From NCBI RefSeq assembly GCF_006345805.1, contig NC_043002.1, positions 5,270,001 to 5,334,000 of the forward strand: a stretch of 64,000 nucleotides of DNA, read 5' to 3'. This stretch comes from Octopus sinensis (lineage: Eukaryota). The notes below the pieces were generated by a model, which was not told the origin of the DNA, did not search any database, and was given only the letters and a program-made list of their open reading frames with translations. The position numbers and the translations under genes are program-made. Shown piece after piece: positions 3,230 to 64,000 of this stretch (position 1 is the first letter of the stretch; the number at the start of each line of letters is the position of its first letter).

Positions 3230-3658
3230 ATCAGGCAGGAAGTTGGCTCAAAAAGCAAAAAGCAAGGCCATGTAGTGGGACATGGAGTTATGTACAGGGT
3301 GGTGTTCATGTAAAGAGTTCAGGCCACTTGTGATCAAGGAAGACTTTGAACCGACCGGTCGTCGGCATCTTCACTATCTCGTCCGGCAGCTTATTCCACG
3401 GATCCGCAACCCAGACGGAGAAAGCCCCTCTCCTTCGATTGAGATGAAATCGTCGCAGATAAAGCTTTTCAGAGTGACCCCGCAGCCTACGCTCTGGAGC
3501 AGGAGTGAAGAACAGCTCTTTCGAGAGGTTACACTTTCCGCTTATGATGTTGTGAGCAAGAATGAGATCACCACGGCGTCGTCGTTTTTCTAGAGAATAA
3601 AGGTCGAGCGTCTTCAGCCTTTCTTCATAAGACAAATGCTTGAGACCAAGAACCATGC
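3230..3658 (-). mobile_element. CR1-type LINE, 5'-truncated ORF2 C-terminus plus 3'UTR
   Basis: ORF 3306..3656: LKHLSYEERLKTLDLYSLEKRRRRGDLI...FSVWVADPWNKLP, the typical CR1 ORF2 end. Confidence 0.88.
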
Positions 3659-5472: not shown

Positions 5473-6152
5473 TCACAGCGATAATGCTCTTTTCAGTACA
5501 TGAACCGGTCCAGTTAACACGATTTGTTGCACTTCCTGTAGGAATGGTAAGCCTGGTATCATTTTCAAATAGGTTTCAGCACCTTTTTTTTTTATCATTC
5601 CTAGAGATCCTACAATCACTGGTACTGTAGTCGCCTTGAGATGCCACATTTTTTTCAATTTCTATTAGCAGGTCTTTATATTTACTAATCTTGTCAAATT
5701 CTTTTGCCGCTATATTGTGATCGCAAGGGATACTCATGTCAATTAATAAACACATCTTTTTTGTCTGATGTTTTATGATATATCCGGTTTATTAGCTTTT
5801 ATAGTTTTGTCGGTCTGCACAGGGAAGTCCCATAGAATCGACACATTTTCTCCCTCAGTCACAGCTTCAGGATGATGTTTATACCATTTGTCAGCGGTTT
5901 TGATTCTATAATGCCGACATATTGTCCAATGTAAATACTGGCCGACTCTGTCATGTCTTGCTTTATATTCTGCAGGTGCTAAGACTCTACATCCTGAGAT
6001 TAGGTGGTCTATTGTTTCAATCTCATCGTTACAGAATCGGCATTTTGGGTCAGCTCCATTGTTTATCACATTGGCTTGGTAGTTCAGGGTTAATAAGCAT
6101 TGGTCTTGAGAAGCTAATATGAAACCTTCACTCTCCGCTTTTAGCCCTGAGC
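5473..6152 (-). mobile_element. R4/Dong-clade non-LTR retrotransposon fragment (CCHC knuckle and restriction-like endonuclease)
   Basis: GLKAESEGFILASQDQ...KCRFC..ETIDHLISGC...RHDRVGQYLHW...ILWDFPVQTDKTIKANKPDI, then KMWHLKATTVPVIVGSLG; frameshifted; abuts (TAA)n. Confidence 0.9.
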
Positions 6153-6781
<629 letters not shown>

Positions 6782-10033: not shown

Positions 10034-10468
10034 TATTAAGGCGGCGAACTGGCAGAAACGTTAGCACGCCGGGCGAAATGCGTAGCCGTATTTCGTCTGC
10101 TGTTACGTTCTGGGTTCAAATTCCACCGAGGTCGACTTTGCTATTCATCCTTTCGGGGTCGATTAAAGAAGTACTAGTTACGCACTGGGGTCGATGTAAT
10201 TGACTTAATCCGTTTGTCTGTCCTTGTTTGTCCTCTCTGTGTTTAGCCCCTTGTGGGTAGTAAAGAAATAGGTATTTCGTCTGCCGCTACGTTCTGAGTT
10301 CAAATTCTGCCGAGGTCGACTTTGCCTTTCATCCTTTCGGGGTCGATAAATTAAGTACCAGTTATGCACTGGGGTCGATGTAATCGACTTAATCCGTTTG
10401 TCTGCCGTTGTTTGTCTGTCGTTGTTTGTCCTCTCTGTGTTTAGCCCCTTGTGGGTAGTAAAGAAATA
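10034..10468 (+). mobile_element. Dimeric OR2-like CORE-SINE
   Basis: Full unit plus head-truncated unit; 15-bp TSD ggttatagcagaagc at 10019-10033 and 10469-10483. Confidence 0.9.
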
Positions 10469-10937
10469 GGTTATAGCAGAAGCACACCAAGACCAGAATG
10501 TATTAAAAATCAAGTATACTGATGGAACATTCCAATGAAGACAGTAACCTTGTACTAACTCAGTAAGTCCAATATTGTTCCATGAGATGGGGAACAAAAG
10601 TCACGCACTATTATGTAGCTTAGCAAATGGGAATGTCTCGTCTAAAATTGGGGATAAGAAGAATCTTTATGAACTAATAGTAAAACTTACAGGCTATTGT
10701 TATTCATTTGTAATTGTTATCATAGGTGCATCAAGCCACGTAACTACAGGCTTGCATAAAAGCCTAGAAGTGTTAGTGATCTCCAAGAAAGAGCAAAACG
10801 AAATTATTTACATCTTCCAAATACAAACAGTAATACAGTGAAAAATTCGTAAAATCTTTCAGGGAATCTCCGATTGAGTATCCTTCAATGAAAGTAAGGA
10901 AATAATCGCATGTGCTTATGGCATCAGCCTTATGACA

Positions 10938-11370
10938 TCAGACTCGCTACCGAATTCAGATTGGTGAATGCAATCGTCTTCCCAATAGCAACATATGGAT
11001 GCGAGACCTGGACACTAAAGAAAGCTGACCAGAAGAGAATTAATGCATTCGAGCTTTGGTGTTGGAGAAAACTTTTAAGGATTCCATGGACAGCGAGGCT
11101 CACCAATGGAGAAGTTCTTAACCAGATCAAGCCGAAACTGTCGCTAGAAGCTAGGATCACCAAGTATAGATTGACATATTTTGGTCATATTATGCGGAGA
11201 AAATCCCTGGAGAAGGACATCATGCTCGGAATGGTCAGTGGCAAGAGAGGAAGAGGCAGATCAAGAACCCGCTGGCTTGACACCATCAAGAATGACACGG
11301 GAATGGCCATAGCCAATCTGAAAGAAGCGACCCAGAATAGAACTGACTGGAGGACACTGATCCATCGAGG
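10938..11370 (+). mobile_element. RTE-clade (BovB-like) LINE, RT C-terminal fragment
   Basis: LVNAIVFPIATYGCETWTLKKADQKRINAFELWCWRKLLRIPWTAR..N..VL...YFGHIMRR..LEKDIMLG...GKRGRGR.RTRWLD. Confidence 0.92.
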
Positions 11371-11496
11371 ACACTGATCCAACACTGGTTGTCAAGCGGT
11401 GGTGGGAAACAAACACAGACACAAAGACACATACATATAATACACACACATACACACACACACACGCACACGCACTCATACGTACACACACACACA

Positions 11497-12053: not shown

Positions 12054-12092
<39 letters not shown>

Positions 12093-12095
<3 letters not shown>

Positions 12096-12415
12096 CGAAA
12101 AGAGTGAAAAACTACAGAAGGCTTGTGTTATAAGATTAAAGAATGTATTTAAGTCGTTATGTTAGAAAAATTTTATAAAATTTTGTGTATAGTAACATAG
12201 TTTTGGGAGAAATAACCGGTTACGTATATACTTTTCAAATTTACCGGTTATTTCTCCTAAAACTGTTACTATACACAAAATTTTATGACATTTTTCTAAC
12301 ATAACGACTTAAATACATTCTTTAACCTTACAACACAAGCCTTCTGTAGTTTTTTCACTCTTTTCTATTTTATATACATCCAACCACGTGCTTTCACACA
12401 CCAACTTTCTCACCT
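12093..12415. mobile_element. Fold-back element (~115-bp inverted arms, ~22-nt loop) between (TA)n arrays
   Basis: aaaagagtgaaaaactacagaaggcttgtg...aataaccggt versus accggttatt...cacaagccttctgtagttttttcactctttt; right end ctttctcacctata(TA)n. Confidence 0.85.
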
Positions 12416-12426
12416 ATATATATATA

Positions 12427-12491
<65 letters not shown>

Positions 12492-12777
12492 TAACAATAT
12501 AGGGTGAAATTAATTAATTTGGAATAATTATTAATTACACCAAGTAGATTCGGCATGTAAAAGCCTCATTCGAGGAAAATTTAAGTAATACTAAGCAATT
12601 AAGGGTTTAGCAACGAATTGCCTCACCACACACCGAATTTAGAAATAGCAGTCAATGAGTTATAGCTATTCTTTCTACTAAAAGGGAGATCTCAGTAAAA
12701 ACACAGCACTTGAAAGGCAAACACAGACAGGTAAGAGAGAATGAAATGACGGCAATCTATCATACAATTTTAAGTCA

Positions 12778-12868
12778 CCTACGGACGTACGTTTCGAAAT
12801 TAAGTTTTAGGAAAGCATAAGAATTAGATAATTATATCTTACCCAACTTCTTTTCTCATCAGCGTAGG
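12778..12868 (-). ncRNA. Type I hammerhead ribozyme, canonical core
   Basis: Reverse complement of 13247-13337: cctacg CUGAUGA G..C GAAA CGUACG UC cgtagg. Confidence 0.85.
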
Positions 12869-13246
12869 ACACTACAATTATGAATAATTGTATATTAAAT
12901 TTCGAGATACTAGACGGCATCATCTCAACTCAGTATCAGAGCGAGCTAAAGCCGTTACCAGTACCACCAAATTCAAAGTGTGAATGAAAGTTTGTGTCAC
13001 CAGCCCCTTCCCACCCGCGTGTAGCCAAGACAAGATGCTGTGGTCATTTACTGGGATGAAATATGGTTATCAGTAACAATATAGGGTGAAATTAATTAAT
13101 TTGGAATAATTATTAATTACACCAAGTAGATTTCGGCATGTAAAAGCCTCATTCGAGGAAAATTTAAGTAATACTAAGCAATTAAGGGTTTAGCAACGAA
13201 TTAAGTTTTAGGAAATTTAATATACAATTATTCATAATTGTAGTGT

Positions 13247-13337
13247 CCTACGCTGATGAGAAAAGAAGTTGGGTAAGATATAATTATCTAATTCTTATGC
13301 TTTCCTAAAACTTAATTTCGAAACGTACGTCCGTAGG
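13247..13337 (+). ncRNA. Type I hammerhead ribozyme, canonical core
   Basis: Stem I cctacg (13247-52)/cgtagg (13332-37); CTGATGA 13253-59; ~60-nt domain II closed by G13260-C13319; GAAA 13320-23; palindromic stem III; GUC 13329-31. Confidence 0.87.
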
Positions 13338-13829
13338 TGACTTAAAATTGTATGATAGATTGCCGTCATTTCATTCTCTCTTACCTGTCTGTGTTTGCCT
13401 TTCAAGTGCTGTGTTTTTACTGAGATCTCCCTTTTAGTAGAAAGAATAGCTATAACTCATTGACTGCTATTTCTAAATTCGGTGTGTGGTGAGGCAATTC
13501 GTTGCTAAACCCTTAATTGCTTAGTATTACTTAAATTTTCCTCGAATGAGGCTTTTACATGCCGAAATCTACTTGGTGTAATTAATAATTATTCCAAATT
13601 AATTAATTTCACCCTATACTGTTACTGATAACCATATTTCATCCCAGTAAATGACCACAGCATCTTGTCTTGGCTACACGCGGGTGGGAAGGGGCTGGTG
13701 ACACAAACTTTCATTCACACTTTGAATTTGGTGGTACTGGTAACGGCTTTAGCTCGCTCTGATACTGAGTTGAGATGATGCCTTCTAGTATCTCGAAATT
13801 TAATATACAATTATTCATAATTGTAGTGT

Positions 13830-13920
13830 CCTACGCTGATGAGAAAAGAAGTTGGGTAAGATATAATTATCTAATTCTTATGCTTTCCTAAAACTTAATT
13901 TCGAAACGTACGGCCGTAGG
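13830..13920 (+). ncRNA. Type I hammerhead ribozyme copy, cleavage triplet mutated GUC to GGC (predicted inactive)
   Basis: Matches 13247-13337 except gaaacgtacggccgtagg (G at 13913). Confidence 0.8.
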
Positions 13921-14111
13921 TGACTTAAAATTGTATGATAGATTGCCGTCATTTCATTCTCTCTTACCTGTCTGTGTTTGCCTTTCAAGTGCTGTGTTTT
14001 TACTGAGATCTCCCTTTTAGTAGAAAGAATAGCTATAACTCTTTGACTGCTATTTCTAAATTCGGTGTGTGGTGAGGCAATTCGTTGCTAAACCCTTAAT
14101 TGCTTTGTACT

Positions 14112-14174
<63 letters not shown>

Positions 14175-14344
14175 AATGGAGAAATTGTACAAAATGTATA
14201 AATGGATGACTGAGTAAAGTACCGGCACACTATCGATTACCTGTTAACCGTAGATTTACTGCAAGAACTTCGTACCGGCGGTTGGGGCAACAGTATTAAT
14301 AAACTAGGAGTTGGAATGTGTAAAAGACTTTATTGGGTACAACA

Positions 14345-30376: not shown

Positions 30377-32531
30377 CACTACGTAACAATTTTCAAAAAA
30401 AAATTTTATTGTTTATCAATCCACTTTTTCTGCTGATTCCAAAAATGAAATAATTTTTTTGCGTATCATCAACAGTTAAAAAAATATGTCGACTTTCAAT
30501 GTTATTATATATTCGGTAGTTTTATAATGTTCCGCTACTAAATGTATGTTTAATTTTCTTTTTCAGACCAATTACAAAGTTGTGCTCCTTTCAGGATCGC
30601 TACTAGAGTATGTAAAAATTATCCAGATACATTTTGCTATGTGTGTGGTTATTATTGGAAAAAAAAAGCAGGTATTACATAAGATCGTGAAAGGTGCCAA
30701 ATTGTGGATAGCGTACAGACTCTATTTCAGAATGCCCATGGGAGACCAGGACAAACTATGGGCTCCACATGTGATATGTGGAAGCTGTCGATCTGCTCTA
30801 GGAGGATGGTTAAGAGGTACAGGAAGGTCAATGTCTTTTGCCATTCCAAGGGTATGGAGAGAGCCAAAGAACAATCACGATGACTGTTACTTTTGTATGA
30901 TCGATGTGACAAAGTACAGAAAAGTGAAAGGAAGACAAGCTCTTCAGTATCCAGACATACCATCATCTAGAGCACCTGTCCCACATGATGACAGTTTACG
31001 AGTACCACTACCACCAGAAAATATTTCATCTGAAGAGTCAACAAGTAGCAGAAGCCAAGAAATGGAGGAAGCTTTCGTACCAAGAACGACTTCGGAGCCT
31101 CACTTTCCAAATCAGAGTGAGCTAGATGATTTAATCAGGGATCTGGGTCTTACTAAGTCAGGGGATGAACTTCTTTCATCAAGGTTGAAGGAAGGGAATC
31201 TACTGGGGAAGACTGCAAGACATCTGTGTACCGCAAACGCCATGAATAATTTGAAATTTACTATGAAAATATTAATGATCTGTGTTATTGTAAAGATGTG
31301 ATTTGTTTGTTTACTGCTATTGGACTCAAGCATGATTCTGCAGAATGGCAACTGTTCATAGATAGTTCAACACGAAGTCTCAAAGCAATGTTGCTCCACA
31401 ATGGAAATAGATATCCTTCTTTGCATCTTGCACACTCCATACAGAAGAAGGAAAATTACGATAATGTCAAAGAACTTCTCGACAAAATAAATTACGCTGA
31501 GTTTATGTGTTTATGTGTGGTGATTTCAAAATGCTTGCCTTCTTGCTTGGCTTGCAATGGGGATACACAAAGTATTCATGTTTCCTTTGCTTATGGGACA
31601 GCAGAGCTGATGATGATCATTACAAGAGAGTACATTGGCCCCCAGGAGTGGAACTGCACCCAGGAATGTTAAATGTTCTCAGATTCCAACAAAATCATCT
31701 TATTACCCCCACTTCATATCAAACTCGGATTGGTAAAACAGTTTGTGAAGGCCTTAGAGTTTAGAGGAGAATCTTTTCATGAAACTTGTCTTATGTTTCC
31801 AAAGCTATCTGAAGCTAAGATCAAGGGTGGCATATTTGTTGGGTCCCAAGTAAATGCAATGTTAAAGTCGAAGAAACTGGAAAGAGCGATGACAAAAGTT
31901 GAAAAAGGAGCTTGGTATGCATTTCGTGGATTCCTAGGAAATCACAAGGATCCTAGTTACAAACAGCTGGTAGCAAAGCTTATAGAAAACGTCAAGAAAA
32001 TGGGTTGTCGTATGCCCTTAAAGGTTCATTTTTTTGCACTCTCACCTATATTTTCCCCGAAAACTTGGATGATGTCAGTGAGGAGCATGGTGAGCTATTT
32101 CATCAGGACATCGCAACTATGGAAAGAAGATACCAAGGACGATGGGATACTGCTATGATGGGAGATTATATATGGTCTCTAGTCAAAAGAGATGAAGGTA
32201 TACACTCCAGAAAATCTCGATCATCAAAGCAGTTCTCATCTTAAGAAAAGAGTTATCAAGGCATTTACAGTGCAGAGTTTTATTGTTTCTTTTTGTTCTA
32301 TATATGAAAAAGTACTATATGTTGTGTATTTATCCTTACAATACTAGAATAGATTGAACCAACAAAGTGCTGTAGGGAAAAGTTACAAATATAACGAGCA
32401 AATATGAAATTAGGAATAAATAAATAACTATCGATGTTACGTCAAACGAATGTGATTTTTGAATTTAGTGGCAAAAGATGCATATCTGAACATTATAAAA
32501 TACAAATAAACAAAACATGTATTACATTGTG
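30377..32531 (+). mobile_element. Chapaev3-type DNA transposon (Transib/RAG1-related DDE), complete ends, frameshifted transposase
   Basis: Ends cactacgtaa.../...ttacattgtg (8/10 inverted match); TAA duplication at 30374-76 and 32532-34; WAPHVICGSC, EPKNNHDDCYFC, LFIDSS, CGDFK, YSCFLCLWDSR, PPLHIKLG, SEEHGE.FHQD. Confidence 0.85.
30546..32244 (+). pseudogene. Chapaev3 transposase pseudogene
   Basis: Split over five overlapping ORFs (30546..31301, 31298..31672, 31507..31764, 31673..32158, 32005..32244). Confidence 0.85.
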
Positions 32532-49497: not shown

Positions 49498-49566
<69 letters not shown>

Positions 49567-49729
49567 TGACGTATATTTGCCATTTGAATATGGCTAACCC
49601 CTAAGGGTGGATGCTACTGTAGTTTGTAGCCCCAGGAGGACACCTCCTCTAGCTGGCTATAGACACACTTTCTGTGCCCTATCAGTATTTGCAAAGGGAA
49701 GCCATCCTTCCCGTCTTCAACTTATGATA

Positions 49730-49774
49730 CACACGGACTCGAGTTTCAGGGTATTGACCCGTCATCGGCGTGTG
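49730..49774 (-). ncRNA. Type I hammerhead variant (U4C)
   Basis: cacacg CCGAUGA c GGGU caau ACCC u GAAA CUCGAG UC cgugug. Confidence 0.7.
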
Positions 49775-49904
49775 ACAATCATAGTTGTCGATGAGAAGTA
49801 GGTTCCCTTCACAAATACATATACTTTTTCCAGTGTCAATCGATACTGGAAAAAGTATATGTATTTGTGAAGGGAACCGACTTCTCATCGACAACTATGA
49901 TTGT

Positions 49905-49949
49905 CACACGCCGATGATGGGTCAAAACCCTGAAACTCGAGTCCGTGTG
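49905..49949 (+). ncRNA. Type I hammerhead variant (U4C)
   Basis: cacacg CCGAUGA u GGGU caaa ACCC u GAAA CUCGAG UC cgugug. Confidence 0.7.
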
Positions 49950-50202
49950 TATCATAAGATGAAGACGGGAAGGATGGCTTCCCTTCGCAAATACTGATAG
50001 GGCACAGAAAGTGTGTCTATAGCCAGCTGGAGGAGGTGTCCTCCTGGGGCTACAAACTACAGTAGCATCCATCCTTAGGGGTTAGCCATATTCAAATGGC
50101 AAATATACGTCACGATGTGTTGCTGCTACTGTTTATAACTCGCTCTGAGATTTATCATTATATATATATATACATATAGTTAATCCAAACAAGAAAACAC
50201 AG

Positions 50203-51048: not shown

Positions 51049-52324
51049 TATATATATATATATATATAATATATATGTATGCATGTATGTATGTATATTA
51101 TGTGTACGTATATACATATACTCACACACACATACATACACATAGGTCACACACATGCATACACACACTACATACAAACGTATATACATGCTCACTCACA
51201 CACATATAAACATGTTAATGTGCAACTGAAAATAAATAAAAAAATATCTATTTGGCATCTTCTCTCGCTAATTTTTACATAACATTTTGTAAACTGTTCT
51301 TCAGTGGAAATACCAGCCTCCTGCGTTTCTTGATAGCTATCCCATAATACATAAACCGTATGTCAGATACTTTATATTGCTTTTGTTTCGGATTTCATAA
51401 AGAAGAAAAGACGTTCTCTCTGTTCTTCAATTACCATATATGTGTGTGTGTGTGTTTTTGTGTGTTACTGTGTGTACATATATGTGTATGTATATATGGT
51501 AAAAAAGATAGAAGCGTTGAGGTATGTTGTATACCAGCCTTGAACTATTTTCCCTCAACAGCAGGATTTAAACTTCGTTGCTACACTAGGTCACGCTGAA
51601 CACATTACTTAAACAGACATACTTATTTCAGAGATTTAGTTTGCATCCGTTAGTTTGATGAGAAAAGTACGGTTTAAATGGTGTTTTTGAATAATTTATA
51701 TTCTAGATAATTCATACAACATTAACGTACATTAACTTCGAGATTTTCCTATCGCTACTTCAGTAAGTACTGCGAAATCTATACGTCGCTGATAAAATCA
51801 TATAAGACCGAAATATGCCAAGAGTGTTCTCCCATCCTTGGCGAATTAATTAAAATGATATTTGTCACTGATTGATATTGATACTACTTATCGTATAATT
51901 ATTTCTAGTTGGAGTGGTTGTATACTGTCAACTTAACGTGACAGTCCTGTAAGGGAATTACCACACCGCTGTTTAGCCCTAGGAAGCATCGACGCTTCCT
52001 GTCGGCCTTGACACATTTCCTGTGTCCTTATATATTTACGAAGGGGAGACAAACACCCCCAACAGCTAGGCCTGCATCTAGAGACTTGCATGTTTCTGGG
52101 TCTTGCCCATCATCAGTCTAGAGTAGCATTTCTAATTGCCCCTGCATTGAATATGCTAATTCTAACATAACTATTGTTAGCATTAGAATTATTTGCTTTA
52201 TGAATAATATCTAAAACCAGTTCTTGAACACAGCAGACTTCATGGAGCAACAGAAGCTACAATATTGGCTTCACGGGCGCCGGTTACATTGCTAGACACA
52301 TTTAAAGGGAACAACTACAATATC

Positions 52325-52740
52325 TATTTCTTTACTACCCACAAGGGGCTAAACACAGAGAGGACAAACAAGGACAGACAAACGGATTAAGTCGATTACA
52401 TCGACCCCAGTGCGTAAATTGGTACTTAGTTTATCGACCCCGAAAGGATGAAAGGCAAAGTCGACCTCGGCGGAATTTGAACTCAGAACGTAACGGCTGA
52501 CGAAATACCTATTTCTTTACTACCCACAAGGGGCTAAACACAGAGGGGACAAACAAAGACAGACAAACGGATTAAGTCGATTACATCGACCCCAGTGCGT
52601 AACTGGTACTTATTTAATCGACCCCGAAAGGATGAAAGGCAAAGTCGACCTCGGCGTCATTTGAACTCAGAACGTAACGACAGACGAAATACAGCTAAGC
52701 ATTTCGCCCGGCGTGCTAACGTTTCTGCCAGCTCGCCGCC
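52325..52740 (-). mobile_element. Dimeric OR2-like CORE-SINE
   Basis: Same internal junction as 10034-10468; TSD ctacaata(t/c)ctat at 52315-27 and 52740-52. Confidence 0.88.
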
Positions 52741-53142: not shown

Positions 53143-53580
53143 TTAAGGTGGCGAGCTGGCAGAATCGTTATCGCGCCGGACGAAATGCTTAGCTGTATTT
53201 CGTCTGCTGTTACGTTCTGAGTTCAAATTCCGCCGAGGTCAACTTTGCCTTTCATCCTTTCGGGGTCGATAAATTAAGTACCAGTTGCGCAATGGGGTCG
53301 ATGTAATCGACTTAATCCGTTTGTCTGTCCTTGTTTGTCTCCTCTATGTTTAGCCCCTTCTGGGCAATAAAGAAATAAAAAATAAGAAACGTTAGCACAC
53401 CGGGCGAAATGCTTAGCAGTATTTCATCTTTATGTTCTGAGTCCAAATTCCGCCGAGGTCGACTTTACTTTTCATCCTTTCGGGGTCGATAAATTAAGTA
53501 CCAGATGCGTACTGGGGTCGATCTAATCGAATGGCCCCTTCCCCAAAAATTTCGGGCCTTTTACCTAGATTTGAAAAGAA
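53143..53580 (+). mobile_element. Two adjacent CORE-SINEs with different tails
   Basis: Full copy ~53143-53380, then a head-truncated variant ~53385-53580. Confidence 0.85.
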
Positions 53581-54624: not shown

Positions 54625-55128
54625 ATATATATATATATATATATATATAAATATGTCTCTCACATTACCGACTCCTTTACCTACACTTCCAGTAACGTAA
54701 TTTACTGCATCTTCTACTCTTTCTGCTCTTCCCTGTAAATTGGTCAAACGGGACGCCGCTTAGCTGACGGTTCGCGGAGCACCTCCGAGACATCTGACTC
54801 GGCAACGACACCCGGTCTCGCGTCATTTCCGCTCTACCGATCATTCACCACATCTGTCTGTGTTCGAATTGTCTTTGCACAGGGGTCATCCTGTCTCCCT
54901 CTTTCGCCGTGAACATGAATTAATTTTCTCTCTTCGCTCCTTTGCACCACATGGGCTCAATTCCCTTCCTCTCTTCATCTGACACCTACTTCCTTTCTTC
55001 ATTTGACATCTACTTCCTCTCTTCACTCCTACCATCTCCTCTTTTTCTTATTGCCCCGTATATATGTATTTATATGTGTGTGTGTATGTGTGCGTGTGCA
55101 TGTGTGTTTGTGTATGTATGCATATAAT

Positions 55129-55176
<48 letters not shown>

Positions 55177-55657
55177 AATATGTCTCTCACATTACCGACT
55201 CCTTTACCTACACTTCCAGTAACGTAATTTACTGCATCTTCTACTCTTTCTGCTCTTCCCTGTAAATTGGTCAAACGGGACGCCGCTTAGCTGACCGGTT
55301 CGCGGAGCACCTCCGAGACATCTGACTCGGCAACGACACCCGGTCTCGCGTCATTTCCGCTCTACCGATCATTCACCACATCTGTCTGTGTTCGAATTGT
55401 CTTTGCACAGGGGTCATCCTGTCTCCCTCTTTCGCCGTGAACATGAATTAATTTTCTCTCTTCGCTCCTTTGCACCACATGGGCTCAATTCCCTTCCTCT
55501 CTTCATCTGACACCTACTTCCTTTCTTCATTTGACATCTACTTCCTCTCTTCACTCCTACCATCTCCTCTTTTTCTTATTGCCCCGTATATATGTATTTA
55601 TATGTGTGTGTGTATGTGTGCGTGTGCATGTGTGTTTGTGTATGTATGCATATATAT

Positions 55658-62009: not shown

Positions 62010-64000
62010 GATTGATTGATTGATTGATTGATTGATTCTAGTTTCAGCTTATGAGCTGTGGCCATGCTGGGGCACCGCCATTTGGTGTTGCTACTTGGTT
62101 TCACTTCATGGGGGCTTTCTAGCAACTACTATTTGGTGCATGAGAGAGTTCGATGCAGCTGCCCTCATCTGCCCCTCCTGCCGTGAAGTTGGTTCATCTG
62201 GGACACCTGACAGGAAGAGATCCAGCTTCATTTTAAAGACATCTGTATCCACCCCATGCAGGTCTCTCAGGTTCTTCGGGAGGATATTGAAGAGCTGTGG
62301 GCCTCGGAAGCCCAGGCTATCACAGAATCTTGTCCTACATCTTGATGGCAGGTTTGGAGTCCTAGGCACCACGCAGTGGCGCCTAATTCTGGCATTTGCG
62401 TAACTCTCGATGCCAAAGTTTAGGACACTTCCCTCCAGGATCTTCCAGATGTATATTATGGCATATCTTTCCCGCCTACGCTCCAGGGAATATAATTTTA
62501 ATCTCTTGAGTCTTTCCCAGTAGCTTATATTCTGCATAGAGGCTATCTTCTTCGTGTAGCTTCGTTGGATCGCCTCAAGTTCTGTGATCAACTTGACACT
62601 GGATGGTGACCATAGCTGAGAGCAATAGTCAAAGTGGCTTAGGACAAGTGTCTTCCAGAGGACCATCATGGTTTCTTGTTCTCTTGTTCTAAAGGTTCTA
62701 AGAATCCATCCAGCCACCGTCTACATTTCATTGTCAGTTTAGCAACATGTACATGAAAGGTCGCGTTATCACTCATGTGAATACCCAGGTCACGCACTGA
62801 TTGTGCCTCTGGGATTGCAATCCCTCCGGGTCCAGTGTATTCATTGGGTATTGCATTCAGTTTTGCATGCTGATAGTATAAAGCTTGAAACTTTCCAGCA
62901 TTGAACTGCATGCTATTCTTTTCAGCCCACTTGTATATTTCGTCCAGCTCACATTGCAGGTGTTTAGTGTCCTCAGGGTTCTGTATTGCCTGTGAAACTT
63001 TTGTATCATCTGCATAACTTGTGATCGTGGCTCTCTGCGTGGCTGAGGGCATGTCTGAGAGGGCCATTATGAACAGTAGTGGTCCCAGAACAGTGCCCTG
63101 CGGAACACCGCTCACTATTTGTGTGTTAATGGAAGTGGCCCCATTGGCTACTACCACCTGACTTCTATCCTTCAGAAAGTCATGAAGCCATTCTCCCAGT
63201 TTTCCAACTATGTTGAGATCACGCAGTTTGTGACATATCATTCCATGATCGACTTTATCAAAGGCCTTTGCAAAGTCGAGATATATCACTTCCACATTTG
63301 AGTGGTTGAGCAGCCGTTTCAGCACCCAGTCATAGTGTTGTAGGAGCTGAGTTAAACAGCTTCTCCCTGGTCGGAAACCATGTTGGGTGTCGGGAAGCAA
63401 GTCATTCTCTTCAAGGAAGGTGATCAGCTTCCTTCTGACTATTCGTTCCATGACCTTGCTGATGTGTGAGGTCAGAGATAGGTCTATAGTTCTTGGCTTC
63501 CGCTCTGCTACCTCCTTTATGAATGGGGCATATTTTACCTTCCTTCAGTTTTCCTGGAAGTTTGCCAGCTGCAAGGAAGCTCTGAAAGAGGAACTGCAGT
63601 GGTCTTGCTAGGACTCTCTTACATGCTTTTAGGAGGATTGCCGGGAATCCATCGGGGCCAGTAGCTGAGTCTGTTTTCATTTCATCTATAGCCTTGGTTA
63701 CATCGTCTTCCTTTATATCGATGTAATCTATCGTCGCCGCCTCTGATTTTATATCGGCAGTGGTAAAAAAGTCAGTTGGATTGGTGATTTGGAGATGCCC
63801 AAGGGGTGGAGTGAAAACACTCTTGAATTGCTCATTCAGTATTTTCGAGGAGTGGCCCTATTCTACAGTTCACTGTAGCTGTTTCTTTGGCATACCTGTA
63901 GAAAGCTCTGGGGTTAGATTTTATGTTTTCTATAGCCCAGGCTTCTTTGTCTGCTCTTTCTTTTTCATGGGAGAGTTGCAGACATTTTTCGATTTCCAAC
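62010..64000 (-). mobile_element. CR1-type LINE, ORF2 (RT) region with frameshifts, 3'UTR and (TCAA)n tail; continues beyond the window
   Basis: ATGPDG..LLK..NYRPIS; QHGFRPGRSCLTQLL; YLDFAKAFDKVDH; SGVPQGTVLGPLLF; YADDTK; YCSQLWSP; YWERLKRLKLYSLERRRERY. Confidence 0.93.

What the first reader, a model, noticed from the sequence alone, without database searches (positions are those of the whole stretch)
12490..14107. Retrozyme-like element: ~583-nt unit repeated head-to-tail with one hammerhead per unit
Seen: the right arm has HHR cores 583 nt apart (13253, 13836). The left arm, on the opposite strand, has ~1.2 units with ~130 nt of terminal redundancy. The two arms start and end at different points of the unit, so they are circular permutations, and there is no ORF. 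Established: non-LTR retrozymes are tandem type I HHR repeats that self-cleave into monomers, circularise, and are thought to use PLE machinery. Inference: an octopus retrozyme family producing a ~583-nt linear or circular RNA, copied by rolling-circle reverse transcription. Caveat: the second right-arm HHR is mutated (GGC), so this locus may not release a monomer itself.
Basis: partly seen in the sequence, partly recalled or inferred. Interest (0 to 1): 0.85.

Follow-up and report, generated by a model that had tools for sequence, protein, structure and literature searches.

The report
Hammerhead-ribozyme retroelement inserted head-to-head
A 583-base non-coding repeat carrying a self-cleaving hammerhead ribozyme motif sits in a TA microsatellite as two partial tandem arrays facing away from each other, which is the expected footprint of a known class of parasitic retroelement (animal retrozymes, copied by Penelope-like element enzymes), so it is a clear new example of that class and not a new kind of thing.

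Summary
A 583-nt unit occupies 12486-14112. There are 1.54 units on the + strand (13212-14112) and 1.23 units on the - strand (12486-13202). The arms are about 99% identical, circularly permuted and joined head-to-head, with no ORF longer than 53 codons. Each full unit carries a type I hammerhead motif with every core position in place. The right-arm outer copy has U16.1->G.

My descriptor expects 0.005 such motifs per random 64 kb. Rfam Hammerhead_1 aligns end to end but scores only 23.6 bits (gathering score 34), because helix II holds 56 extra nucleotides.

- The element lies inside a (TA)n tract.
- The two 3' ends face outward.
- The centre is joined through 4-nt microhomologies and a 13-nt templated filler.

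Together with the partial tandems, this is the published insertion signature of Penelope-like elements, whose enzyme cuts and extends both DNA strands in vitro. The best reading is a dead-end copy of a non-autonomous, PLE-mobilised retrozyme made from a circular or multimeric RNA.

Other copies, RNA expression and self-cleavage could not be tested. No searchable collection holds a cephalopod genome. Verdict: a new member of a known kind, of moderate interest.

The parts
12415..12489 (.). Left flanking (TA)n microsatellite. This is the target tract, and the left arm's 3' end abuts it.
   Evidence: TRF period 2, 39 copies; sequence
12486..12903 (-). Left arm, outer partial unit (unit positions 1-419 read on the - strand). 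Its 3' end, at unit position ~416-419, meets (TA)n.
   Evidence: blastn 99.3% over 419 nt; alignment blocks and differences
12904..13202 (-). Left arm, inner partial unit (unit positions 285-583 on the - strand). Its 5' end is at the centre of the locus.
   Evidence: blastn 99.3% over 299 nt
12778..12868 (-). Hammerhead motif of the left arm, with the core intact. C3 is 12862, G12 is 12795 and C17 is 12784, so predicted cleavage is 12784^12783.
   Evidence: Descriptor hit; RF00163 23.6 bits, E=5.7e-4, model 1-45
13199..13215 (+). Centre joint. A 17-nt segment, AATTAAGTTTTAGGAAA, is a copy of unit positions 90-106 in antisense orientation. It overlaps the left arm by AATT and the right arm by GAAA, which leaves 9 nt of true filler at 13203-13211.
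   Evidence: blastn 17/17 match of unit 90-106 to 13215-13199; sequence
13212..13794 (+). Right arm, complete unit (the reference unit, 583 nt, 36% GC).
   Evidence: Direct repeat spacing 583
13247..13337 (+). Hammerhead motif of the inner right-arm unit, intact.
- Helix I: CCUACG (13247-52) pairs with CGUAGG (13332-37).
- Core: CUGAUGA at 13253-59 and GAAA at 13320-23.
- Helix II: a G10.1...C11.1 pair closes a 60-nt helix II.
- Helix III: AC/GU plus a GUAC loop, which together form the ACGUACGU palindrome.
- Cleavage: C17 is 13331, so cleavage is 13331^13332.
13332..13914 (+). Predicted 583-nt monomer RNA, from one cleavage site to the next. As a circle it folds to -153 kcal/mol and is 62% paired.
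   Evidence: Circular MFE z=-6.1 for the + strand and -1.5 for the - strand; pair statistics
13795..14112 (+). Right arm, outer partial unit (unit positions 1-318). Its 3' end, at unit position ~315-318, meets (TA)n.
   Evidence: blastn 98.7% over 318 nt
13830..13920 (+). Hammerhead motif of the outer right-arm unit. It carries U16.1->G (T->G at 13913), which breaks the A15.1-U16.1 pair, so it is predicted inactive.
   Evidence: Difference list; it fails the descriptor
14111..14175 (.). Right flanking (TA)n microsatellite.
   Evidence: TRF period 2, 33 copies

Best explanation
This is one insertion event of a non-coding, 583-nt, hammerhead-bearing retroelement of the animal non-LTR retrozyme type. 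Such elements are non-autonomous derivatives of Penelope-like elements (PLEs).

**Proposed sequence of events**
1. A source array elsewhere in the genome is transcribed. (Inferred.)
2. The type I hammerheads probably pair two by two through the ACGUACGU palindrome of helix III and cut after GUC to release 583-nt monomers. A tRNA ligase can then circularise them. (Inferred from what is established for mussel, coral and axolotl retrozymes.)
3. A PLE reverse transcriptase/GIY-YIG endonuclease supplied in trans breaks a (TA)n tract. It uses the 3'-OH on both DNA strands as primers and starts copying at internal, AU-rich sites of the RNA (unit position ~316 on one side, ~417 on the other). It runs round a circular RNA, or along a multimeric one, for 1.5 and 1.2 unit lengths. 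(The arm lengths, the permutation and the outward 3' ends are shown by the sequence. The identity of the enzyme is inferred.)
4. The two cDNAs meet head-to-head and are joined by a template switch at AATT, 13 further nucleotides copied from unit positions 102-90, and annealing at GAAA. (Shown as sequence. The order of steps is inferred.)
5. Since insertion the locus has picked up about 0.5% differences. One of them is U16.1->G in the outer right-arm hammerhead. The locus can therefore be cut at most once per strand, cannot release a monomer, and is a dead-end daughter copy.
For: **Anatomy**
- Period 583, arms of 1.54 and 1.23 units on opposite strands, different permutation points, about 99% identity.
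- Both outer ends abut (TA)n.
- The centre joint has 4-nt microhomologies and a filler templated from unit positions 90-106.

**Ribozyme**
- All core positions are present, with a 6-bp helix I followed by an internal loop, a G10.1-C11.1 pair, and a 2-bp helix III capped by a palindromic tetraloop.
- This is the canonical metazoan build described in PMC4209133 and PMC7229834.
- The descriptor expects 0.005 hits per 64 kb by chance.
- RF00163 aligns end to end.

**RNA-level selection**
- The circular + strand has z=-6.1 and the - strand z=-1.5. 23 of the 181 pairs are G-U.

**No coding capacity**
- No ORF, and no protein homologue in any of the six frames.

**Literature**
- PLE insertions are partial tandems with an adjacent inverted 5'-truncated copy, and they have a (TA)n or AT-rich target bias (PMC8557442).
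- A purified PLE protein cleaves and extends both top and bottom strands, prefers AT-rich DNA, initiates internally on the RNA, and does not need HHR cleavage (PMC11167929).
- Retrozyme consensus lengths run from 51 to 972 bp, and retrozymes are related to PLE pLTRs (bioRxiv 10.64898/2026.07.22.740005).
- Potentially active Penelope families are annotated in Octopus vulgaris (PMC13282606).

**Same window**
- Two more palindromic insertions lie in (TA)n, each with a one-sided 35-44 nt extension like the PLE 'tail'. One of them carries an HHR-like motif in each arm.
Against: - Only one locus is available. No other copy was found in the window or in any searchable collection, though none of those collections holds cephalopod genomes. 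'Family' and 'free tandem units' are therefore untested.
- The hammerhead is below Rfam's gathering score (23.6 against 34).
- Its helix II is a 60-nt imperfect, AU-rich hairpin (z -1.35), not the usual 4-8 bp.
- The HHR-compatible fold (-17.2 kcal/mol) is less stable than the MFE fold of the same stretch (-20.8).
- Activity is unknown.
- No PLE RT or GIY-YIG ORF is in the window.
- With near-identical copies, no covariation test is possible.
- A circular template and an uncleaved multimeric template cannot be told apart.
- 617 nt of the left arm mirror the right arm from unit position 285 outward, so a strand-switch or fold-back origin of the left arm is not fully excluded.
Confidence: 0.75

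Rival explanations
1. The locus is a heavily 5'-truncated insertion of an autonomous PLE. On this reading the 583-nt unit is simply that element's pseudo-LTR and not an independent non-coding element.
For: HHRs sit in PLE pLTRs, and PLE insertions are commonly 5'-truncated, tandem and inverted (PMC4209133, PMC8557442). No second locus could be examined, so independent existence is unproven.
Against: In a partial tandem of an autonomous PLE, the repeat period equals the whole element (3-4 kb). Here two hammerheads are exactly 583 nt apart with no coding sequence between them, and the - strand arm also wraps round the same 583-nt period. The template itself therefore had a 583-nt period. No frame of the unit has any protein homologue.
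Confidence: 0.1
2. The structure arose at the DNA level. A tandem satellite next to a fragile, cruciform-prone (TA)n tract was duplicated and inverted by fold-back replication or break repair. Alternatively, a single cDNA folded back on itself. In either case there was no second priming event.
For: (TA)n tracts are palindromic. 617 nt of the left arm (unit 285-583 plus 1-318) are the mirror of right-arm positions 13496-14112 (inverted repeat I1). Two perfect palindromes in (TA)n elsewhere in the window show that symmetric fold-back-like products do form here.
Against: The left arm runs 101 nt further (unit positions 319-419) than the right arm before meeting (TA)n. It carries none of the right outer copy's three variants (positions 119, 248, 312). 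A fold-back copy of the present right arm therefore does not reproduce it without an extra deletion. The centre is not a symmetric hairpin but an offset joint with a templated filler.
Confidence: 0.08
3. The unit is a cDNA copy of an exogenous viroid-like or satellite-like circular RNA with a hammerhead. A host retroelement RT captured it once, and it is not a resident genomic retroelement family.
For: It has a single locus and no other copy in the window. The + strand is compact and highly paired, with a ribozyme in one polarity. The arms exceed unit length, as expected for a circular template.
Against: The hammerhead is the canonical metazoan genomic type I, with a helix III palindrome like those of Schistosoma and newt elements (Rfam alignment). 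The GC content (36%) matches the window (37%). No match was found in viral, metagenomic or prokaryotic collections. The known class of genomic retrozymes explains all the features.
Confidence: 0.04
4. The inverted arrangement is an assembly artefact. On this reading, tandem repeat reads were mis-joined in opposite orientation between two TA microsatellites.
For: PLE-type tandem and inverted structures and microsatellites are known to trouble assemblies (PMC8557442).
Against: The centre joint is a specific sequence with microhomologies and a templated filler. The arms carry arm-specific variants: position 408 in both left copies, and positions 119, 248 and 312 in the right outer copy. That is not what a collapsed or chimeric join of identical reads gives.
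Confidence: 0.03

Closest known systems
Metazoan non-LTR retrozymes (Cervera & de la Pena 2020, PMC7229834; Li et al. 2026 preprint)
   Same: Both have a head-to-tail repeat with one type I hammerhead per unit, no ORF and low GC. The HHR has a 6-bp helix I and a 2-bp helix III with a palindromic tetraloop. The + strand RNA is highly self-paired. The unit length lies inside the reported 51-972 bp range.
   Different: Only 1.5 and 1.2 units are present here, against the dimers to 300-mers described. The arms are inverted head-to-head. Helix II carries about 44-56 extra nucleotides. Expression, circles and copy number are untested here. No cephalopod retrozyme turned up in the searchable literature.
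Penelope-like elements (Penelope/Poseidon, Neptune, Naiad; PMC8557442, PMC11167929)
   Same: The insertion architecture matches: a partial tandem plus an adjacent inverted 5'-truncated copy, an AT-rich or (TA)n target, 3' ends at two different internal template positions, and a hammerhead in the repeated part.
   Different: There is no RT/GIY-YIG ORF, the period is 583 nt and not 3-4 kb, and the offset between the two 3' ends is 101 nt and not the usual 30-40 nt 'tail'.
Hammerhead-bearing satellites and SINE-like repeats (newt satellite 2, Schistosoma Sm-alpha, cave-cricket pDo500)
   Same: All carry a canonical type I HHR whose weak helix III is a palindrome that can pair between two copies (ACGCGCGU in the Rfam consensus, ACGUACGU here). 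All occur as tandem genomic repeats.
   Different: Those units are about 330-500 nt with a 4-bp helix II, and they form long arrays. This one has a long helix II and is a short composite insertion.
L1 twin priming (inversions made by priming on both target strands)
   Same: Both involve two cDNAs primed from the two strands of one target break, joined head-to-head through microhomology.
   Different: This is a resemblance of mechanism only. L1 uses poly(A) and T-rich priming on a linear mRNA and gives arms shorter than one unit. Here both arms exceed one template length, and the likely enzyme is a PLE RT.
Plant LTR retrozymes (PMC4918200)
   Same: Both are non-autonomous, ORF-less elements with hammerheads, and the plant elements form 600-1000 nt circular RNAs.
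   Different: Plant elements have type III HHRs inside true LTRs, a PBS, a PPT and 4-bp TSDs, and they depend on Ty3/gypsy machinery. None of these features is present here.

Membership tests
Hammerhead ribozyme, type I (Rfam RF00163) | Conserved core: C3 U4 G5 A6 N7 G8 A9, G12 A13 A14, an A15.1-U16.1 pair and a non-G at position 17 | tested here: met
   CUGAUGA, GAAA and GUC^C are all present in the copies at 13247-13337(+) and 12778-12868(-). The copy at 13830-13920 fails this test (U16.1->G).
Hammerhead ribozyme, type I (Rfam RF00163) | Three helices with helix I open, and helix II closed by a G10.1-C11.1 pair | tested here: met
   Helix I has 6 bp, then a 2x2 internal loop and 3 more bp. 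G10.1-C11.1 is present. Helix III is 2 bp plus a GUAC loop. Helix II is 60 nt, which is atypical.
Hammerhead ribozyme, type I (Rfam RF00163) | Covariance-model score at or above Rfam's gathering threshold (34 bits) | tested here: not met
   The score is 23.6 bits, E=5.7e-4, in 121-nt searches with the full model 1-45 aligned. The loss comes from a 56-nt insert where the model expects about 10 nt. There was no hit in the whole-window or 2-kb searches.
Hammerhead ribozyme, type I (Rfam RF00163) | Site-specific self-cleavage | not testable with these tools
   This needs in vitro transcription of monomeric and dimeric constructs.
Metazoan non-LTR retrozyme | Head-to-tail repeat units, each with one type I HHR | tested here: met
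   The period is 583, and the HHR cores at 13253 and 13836 are 583 nt apart. However, there are only 1.54 and 1.23 units.
Metazoan non-LTR retrozyme | Non-coding, low GC (<45-50%), no LTR, PBS or PPT | tested here: met
   GC is 36%. No ORF. No protein homologue in any frame.
Metazoan non-LTR retrozyme | Multiple copies dispersed in the genome | not testable with these tools
   There is no other copy in the 64-kb window. No cephalopod genome is searchable by DNA. Protein-route and pattern scans found nothing.
Metazoan non-LTR retrozyme | Expressed as monomeric linear and circular RNA | not testable with these tools
   Only indirect evidence is available: strand-specific excess of predicted structure (z -6.1 against -1.5).
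Penelope-like element (autonomous) | A single ORF with a telomerase-like RT and a GIY-YIG endonuclease | tested here: not met
   There is no ORF in the element. The only RT hits in the window are RVT_1 fragments whose nearest named relatives are annotated jockey-like, and there is no GIY-YIG hit.
Penelope-like element (insertion signature, applies to elements mobilised in trans) | A partial tandem plus an adjacent inverted 5'-truncated copy, with an AT-rich or microsatellite target | tested here: met
   The arms are head-to-head with their 3' ends outward, abutting (TA)n on both sides. The criteria come from PMC8557442 and PMC11167929.
Plant LTR retrozyme | Type III HHRs in direct LTRs, a PBS, a PPT and a 4-bp TSD | tested here: not met
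   The HHR is type I (helix I open). There are no LTRs, and a TSD cannot be read inside (TA)n.

The most novel reading that the evidence does not exclude
On this reading, the locus is a direct genomic record that a PLE-type enzyme primed on both strands of one break and copied a covalently closed 583-nt hammerhead RNA circle by rolling-circle reverse transcription from two internal start sites.

The circle would come from an active, so far undescribed cephalopod retrozyme family. Its ribozyme would tolerate, or make use of, a ~50-nt extension of loop 2. The same both-strand reaction on non-coding RNAs would then be what peppers octopod (TA)n microsatellites with palindromic insertions, as seen three times in this window.
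Probability: 0.3. Interest if true: 0.6.

Novelty: new member of a known kind. Interest (0 to 1): 0.4.

Why it matters
Animal retrozymes and their dependence on Penelope-like elements are already described. The link, however, rests mostly on co-occurrence and on sequence relatedness to PLE terminal repeats.

This locus adds structural evidence of a different kind:
- A non-coding hammerhead repeat is inserted with the full PLE signature: both strands primed, a (TA)n target, and internal start sites.
- Both arms are longer than one unit. That requires a circular or multimeric template.

If the family proves abundant and expressed in octopods, it would:
- extend hammerhead circular RNAs to cephalopods;
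- supply a natural HHR with a very long helix II for testing;
- give a concrete substrate for reconstituting PLE-mediated copying of circular RNA.

If it proves to be a lone, dead copy, it is an ordinary repeat annotation.

Tried and rejected
**Rfam**
- The search at gathering threshold on the whole window gave nothing, and so did E<=10 on 2 kb. The hammerhead only appears when 121 nt are searched.
- The HHR-like motifs at 49.9 kb and 52.1 kb never match Rfam.

**Searching for other copies**
- blastn of the unit against the window gave only the locus itself.
- A 733-residue concatenation of all stop-free six-frame segments of the unit, run against 5.8 billion predicted proteins, gave no hit at E<=1e-3. 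It therefore gave no handle for the look-up of encoding contigs.
- Exact-pattern scans of JGI metagenomes (two patterns), IMG/VR and the prokaryote genome collection all returned 0 hits.
- A 21-kb piece of the Argonauta hians genome and a 2-kb ENA contig, reached through a LINE RT homologue, held no HHR and no similarity.
- An exact look-up of the window's RT ORF found nothing on record.

**Readings considered and rejected**
- Chance motif: rejected on the descriptor statistics.
- Plant-type LTR retrozyme: rejected because the HHR type is wrong and there are no LTRs.
- Simple snap-back palindrome for this element: rejected because the arms are offset, the left arm runs 101 nt further, and the variants are arm-specific.
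- A coding remnant of a PLE inside the unit: rejected because no frame has a homologue.

**Not attempted**
- Covariation analysis, because all copies are about 99% identical.
Full report
**1. What is in the sequence**

I took 13212-13794 as the reference unit (583 nt, 36% GC; the window is 37%). The locus then reads as follows:
- (TA)n at 12415-12489.
- A left arm on the - strand, made of unit 1-419 (12903->12486) preceded by unit 285-583 (13202->12904).
- A short joint at the centre.
- A right arm on the + strand, made of unit 1-583 (13212-13794) followed by unit 1-318 (13795-14112).
- (TA)n at 14111-14175.

The arms are 1.23 and 1.54 units long. They are circularly permuted relative to each other. 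The left arm repeats 135 nt (unit 285-419). Both 5' ends point to the centre and both 3' ends point outward into the TA tracts.

The copies differ at very few positions:
- Unit positions 119, 248 and 312 differ in the outer right copy.
- Position 408 differs in both left copies.
- Position 572 differs in the left arm.
- One 1-nt deletion lies at position 354 in the outer left copy.

The element contains no ORF of 40 codons with a start codon. A tandem unit has no stop-free stretch above 53 codons.

**2. The ribozyme motif**

The stretch 13247-13337 reads: CCUACG, CUGAUGA, G...(60-nt helix II)...C, GAAA, C-GUAC-G, UC^, CGUAGG.

- Every invariant core position is present, including the G10.1-C11.1 pair.
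- Helix I has 6 bp followed by an internal loop.
- Helix III has 2 bp capped by a tetraloop. Together with its stem the tetraloop forms the 8-nt palindrome ACGUACGU.
- This is the canonical metazoan type I build: helix I of 6 bp, and a helix III of 1-2 bp with a small palindromic loop that lets two copies pair into an active dimer (PMC4209133; PMC7229834).
- The palindrome self-duplex is predicted at -11.2 kcal/mol.
- An identical intact copy lies on the - strand at 12778-12868.
- The third copy (13830-13920) has T->G at 13913. This is U16.1, so the A15.1-U16.1 pair is lost.

Chance is not an issue. A strict descriptor gives 0.005 hits per random 64-kb sequence.

There are two real reservations:
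- Rfam reports nothing at its gathering threshold, nor at E<=10 over 2 kb. Only 121-nt searches return RF00163, aligned over the whole model at 23.6 bits against a threshold of 34, because 56 nt sit where the model expects about 10.
- Helix II is a long, imperfect, AU-rich hairpin of unremarkable stability (-8.7 kcal/mol, z -1.35). The HHR-compatible fold (-17.2) is less stable than the unconstrained fold (-20.8).

Its first 4 bp (GAAA/UUUC) followed by an internal loop could still present a loop-2-like surface, but activity is unknown.

**3. Evidence that the unit is an RNA-level entity**

Folded as a circle, the + strand monomer (13332-13914) reaches -153 kcal/mol against -118 +/- 5.7 for dinucleotide shuffles (z -6.1). 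The - strand reaches z -1.5. In the + strand fold 62% of the bases are paired, and 23 of the 181 pairs are G-U. That accounts for the strand asymmetry and points to selection on the hammerhead-sense RNA.

Both arms run through the cleavage site, three times in all, with exact 583-nt periodicity. The template was therefore either a ligated circle or an uncleaved multimer. The two leave the same footprint and cannot be told apart from this locus.

**4. Architecture and mechanism**

I think it is the most informative feature.

Published PLE insertions have these properties:
- They are partial tandems, often with an inverted 5'-truncated copy at the 5' end.
- They often carry a one-sided 30-40 bp 'tail'.
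- They show a bias for microsatellites, (TA)n in particular (PMC8557442).

A purified PLE protein behaves as follows (PMC11167929):
- It starts reverse transcription at internal sites of the RNA that are not homologous to the target.
- It does not need hammerhead cleavage.

The present locus matches point by point:
- The target is a (TA)n tract.
- Both 3'-OH ends were used. The + strand primer ends at about 12485 and the - strand primer at about 14113.
- Copying started at two different internal sites of the unit (~316 and ~417). Both sites lie in predicted single-stranded, AU-rich stretches.
- The arms are head-to-head.

The centre, 13199-13215, is AATTAAGTTTTAGGAAA. This is a perfect antisense copy of unit positions 90-106. 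It shares AATT with the end of the left arm (unit 285-288) and GAAA with the start of the right arm (unit 1-4).

The simplest reading has three steps:
- The left-arm cDNA switched template at AATT.
- It copied 13 more nucleotides.
- It then annealed through GAAA to the 3' end of the right-arm cDNA, after which each strand was filled in on the other.

This resembles L1 twin priming in logic, though not in enzyme or template.

I considered a single cDNA that folded back on itself, because 617 nt of the left arm mirror 13496-14112. Two facts argue against it without an extra deletion:
- The left arm runs 101 nt further into the unit before reaching (TA)n.
- It lacks all three variants of the outer right copy.

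I keep this as a minor rival.

**5. State of this copy**

The left arm has one hammerhead. The right arm has one intact and one disabled hammerhead. Neither strand can release a monomer, so this is a daughter insertion and not a source.

The copies differ by roughly 0.5%. Using the octopus calibration quoted in PMC13282606 (JC 0.09 for about 25 My), that would be on the order of a million years. This is a rough inference and assumes an Octopus-like substitution rate.

**6. Host and helper**

A LINE RT fragment in the window (RVT_1) has its best named relatives in Octopus (XP_014783059.1, 68%) and Argonauta hians (58%). An octopod origin is therefore plausible, though not proven to species.

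No GIY-YIG or PLE-type ORF is present in the window. Octopus vulgaris is reported to carry about 30 potentially active Penelope families, and octopus Naiads are recorded in PMC8557442. I found no paper describing hammerheads or retrozymes in cephalopods.

**7. What could not be done**

It could not be run, because no searchable DNA collection contains cephalopod genomes.
- The window holds no other copy.
- A six-frame 'polyprotein' query against the protein collection found nothing.
- Pattern scans of metagenomes, viral contigs and prokaryote genomes found nothing.
- A 21-kb Argonauta sample held nothing related.

One argument against the 'pLTR of an autonomous PLE' rival does come from this locus. 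A partial tandem of an autonomous element has the period of the whole element. Here the period is 583 nt on both strands.

**8. Comparison and verdict**

The element works like, and on every testable criterion fits, the metazoan non-LTR retrozymes. It is inserted with the signature of PLE machinery. It is not an autonomous PLE, because it has no ORF, and it is not a plant LTR retrozyme, because the HHR type is wrong and there are no LTRs.

It differs from described retrozymes in three ways:
- its long helix II;
- its composite inverted form;
- its host clade.

Unit lengths of 51-972 bp are already reported, so its size is not unusual.

I rate it a new member of a known kind, interest 0.4. It is a clean, instructive locus whose class and proposed mechanism are already in the literature. 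Its value lies in architectural evidence tying a non-coding hammerhead repeat to both-strand PLE-type priming on a template longer than one unit.

Noticed in passing
window 49563-50158 (arms 49563-49837 and 49842-50116; one-sided extension ~50115-50158), flanked by (TA)n 49502-49562 and TA-rich/(TA)n from ~50160 and 50218: This is a near-perfect palindrome: 275-nt arms, 97% complementary, with a 4-nt spacer. It lies in a TA microsatellite and has a 44-nt extension on one side only.

Each arm carries, on its outward-reading strand, a compact hammerhead-like motif: CACACG-CCGAUGA-UGGGUCAAAACCCU-GAAA-CUCGAG-UC^CGUGUG. It has an ACUCGAGU palindromic helix III, but C replaces U4 and there is no G10.1-C11.1 pair. 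Only my relaxed descriptor finds it (background 0.32 per window), and Rfam does not.

Its head-to-head, (TA)n and 'tail' layout is the same as the PLE insertion signature.
   Followed up: partly
window ~52075-52135, - strand (C3 at 52116, C17 at 52083): A third hammerhead-like motif occurs here as a single copy: UCUAGA-CUGAUGA-UGGGCAAGACCCA-GAAA-CAUGCAAG-UC^UCUAGA.

It passes the strict descriptor (0.005 expected per window) but has U10.1-A11.1, and Rfam gives no match even in an 81-nt search.

About 30-75 nt downstream of the cleavage site it shows weak similarity (77% over 43 nt) to the same relative position in the 49.9-kb palindrome. The two may be distant relatives.
   Followed up: partly
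window 12083-12414 (arms ~12083-12220 and 12243-12379; extension 12380-12414), between (TA)n 12056-12091 and 12415-12489: Immediately upstream of the finding, in the same TA tract, lies another palindromic insertion. Its arms are about 137 nt and 93% complementary, and it has a one-sided 35-nt extension. It has no hammerhead core.

It is either a MITE-like foldback with a TA target, or a short 5'-truncated head-to-head PLE-type insertion with a 'tail'. This was not resolved.
   Followed up: partly
window 52319-52700, 53146-53530 and 10088-10471: SINE-like repeats of ~184-198 nt occur here as short tandems and in inverted pairs. Examples are 52319-52417/52504-52602 at 97%, and inverted arms 52510-52741/53146-53377 at 91%. 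A related copy lies at 10088-10471.
   Followed up: no
window 54640-55595: An exact tandem duplication of a ~528-nt segment (54640-55067 repeated at 55167-55595, 100% identical) sits between microsatellites.
   Followed up: no
window 62106-63451 (-), 10910-11377 (+), 5773-6270 (-), 3306-3656 (-): These are fragments of non-LTR (LINE-type) retrotransposon ORFs. They include an RVT_1 domain (1.1e-24) and a weak zf-RVT hit. The closest named relatives of the RT are annotated as jockey-like RT from Octopus (68%) and a hypothetical protein from Argonauta hians (58%).
   Followed up: partly
window 30546-32158 (+): Three consecutive ORFs (251, 124 and 161 aa) look like one frameshifted gene. It has a cysteine-rich N-terminal region and no Pfam match. 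It is possibly a decayed transposase-like or domesticated gene.
   Followed up: no
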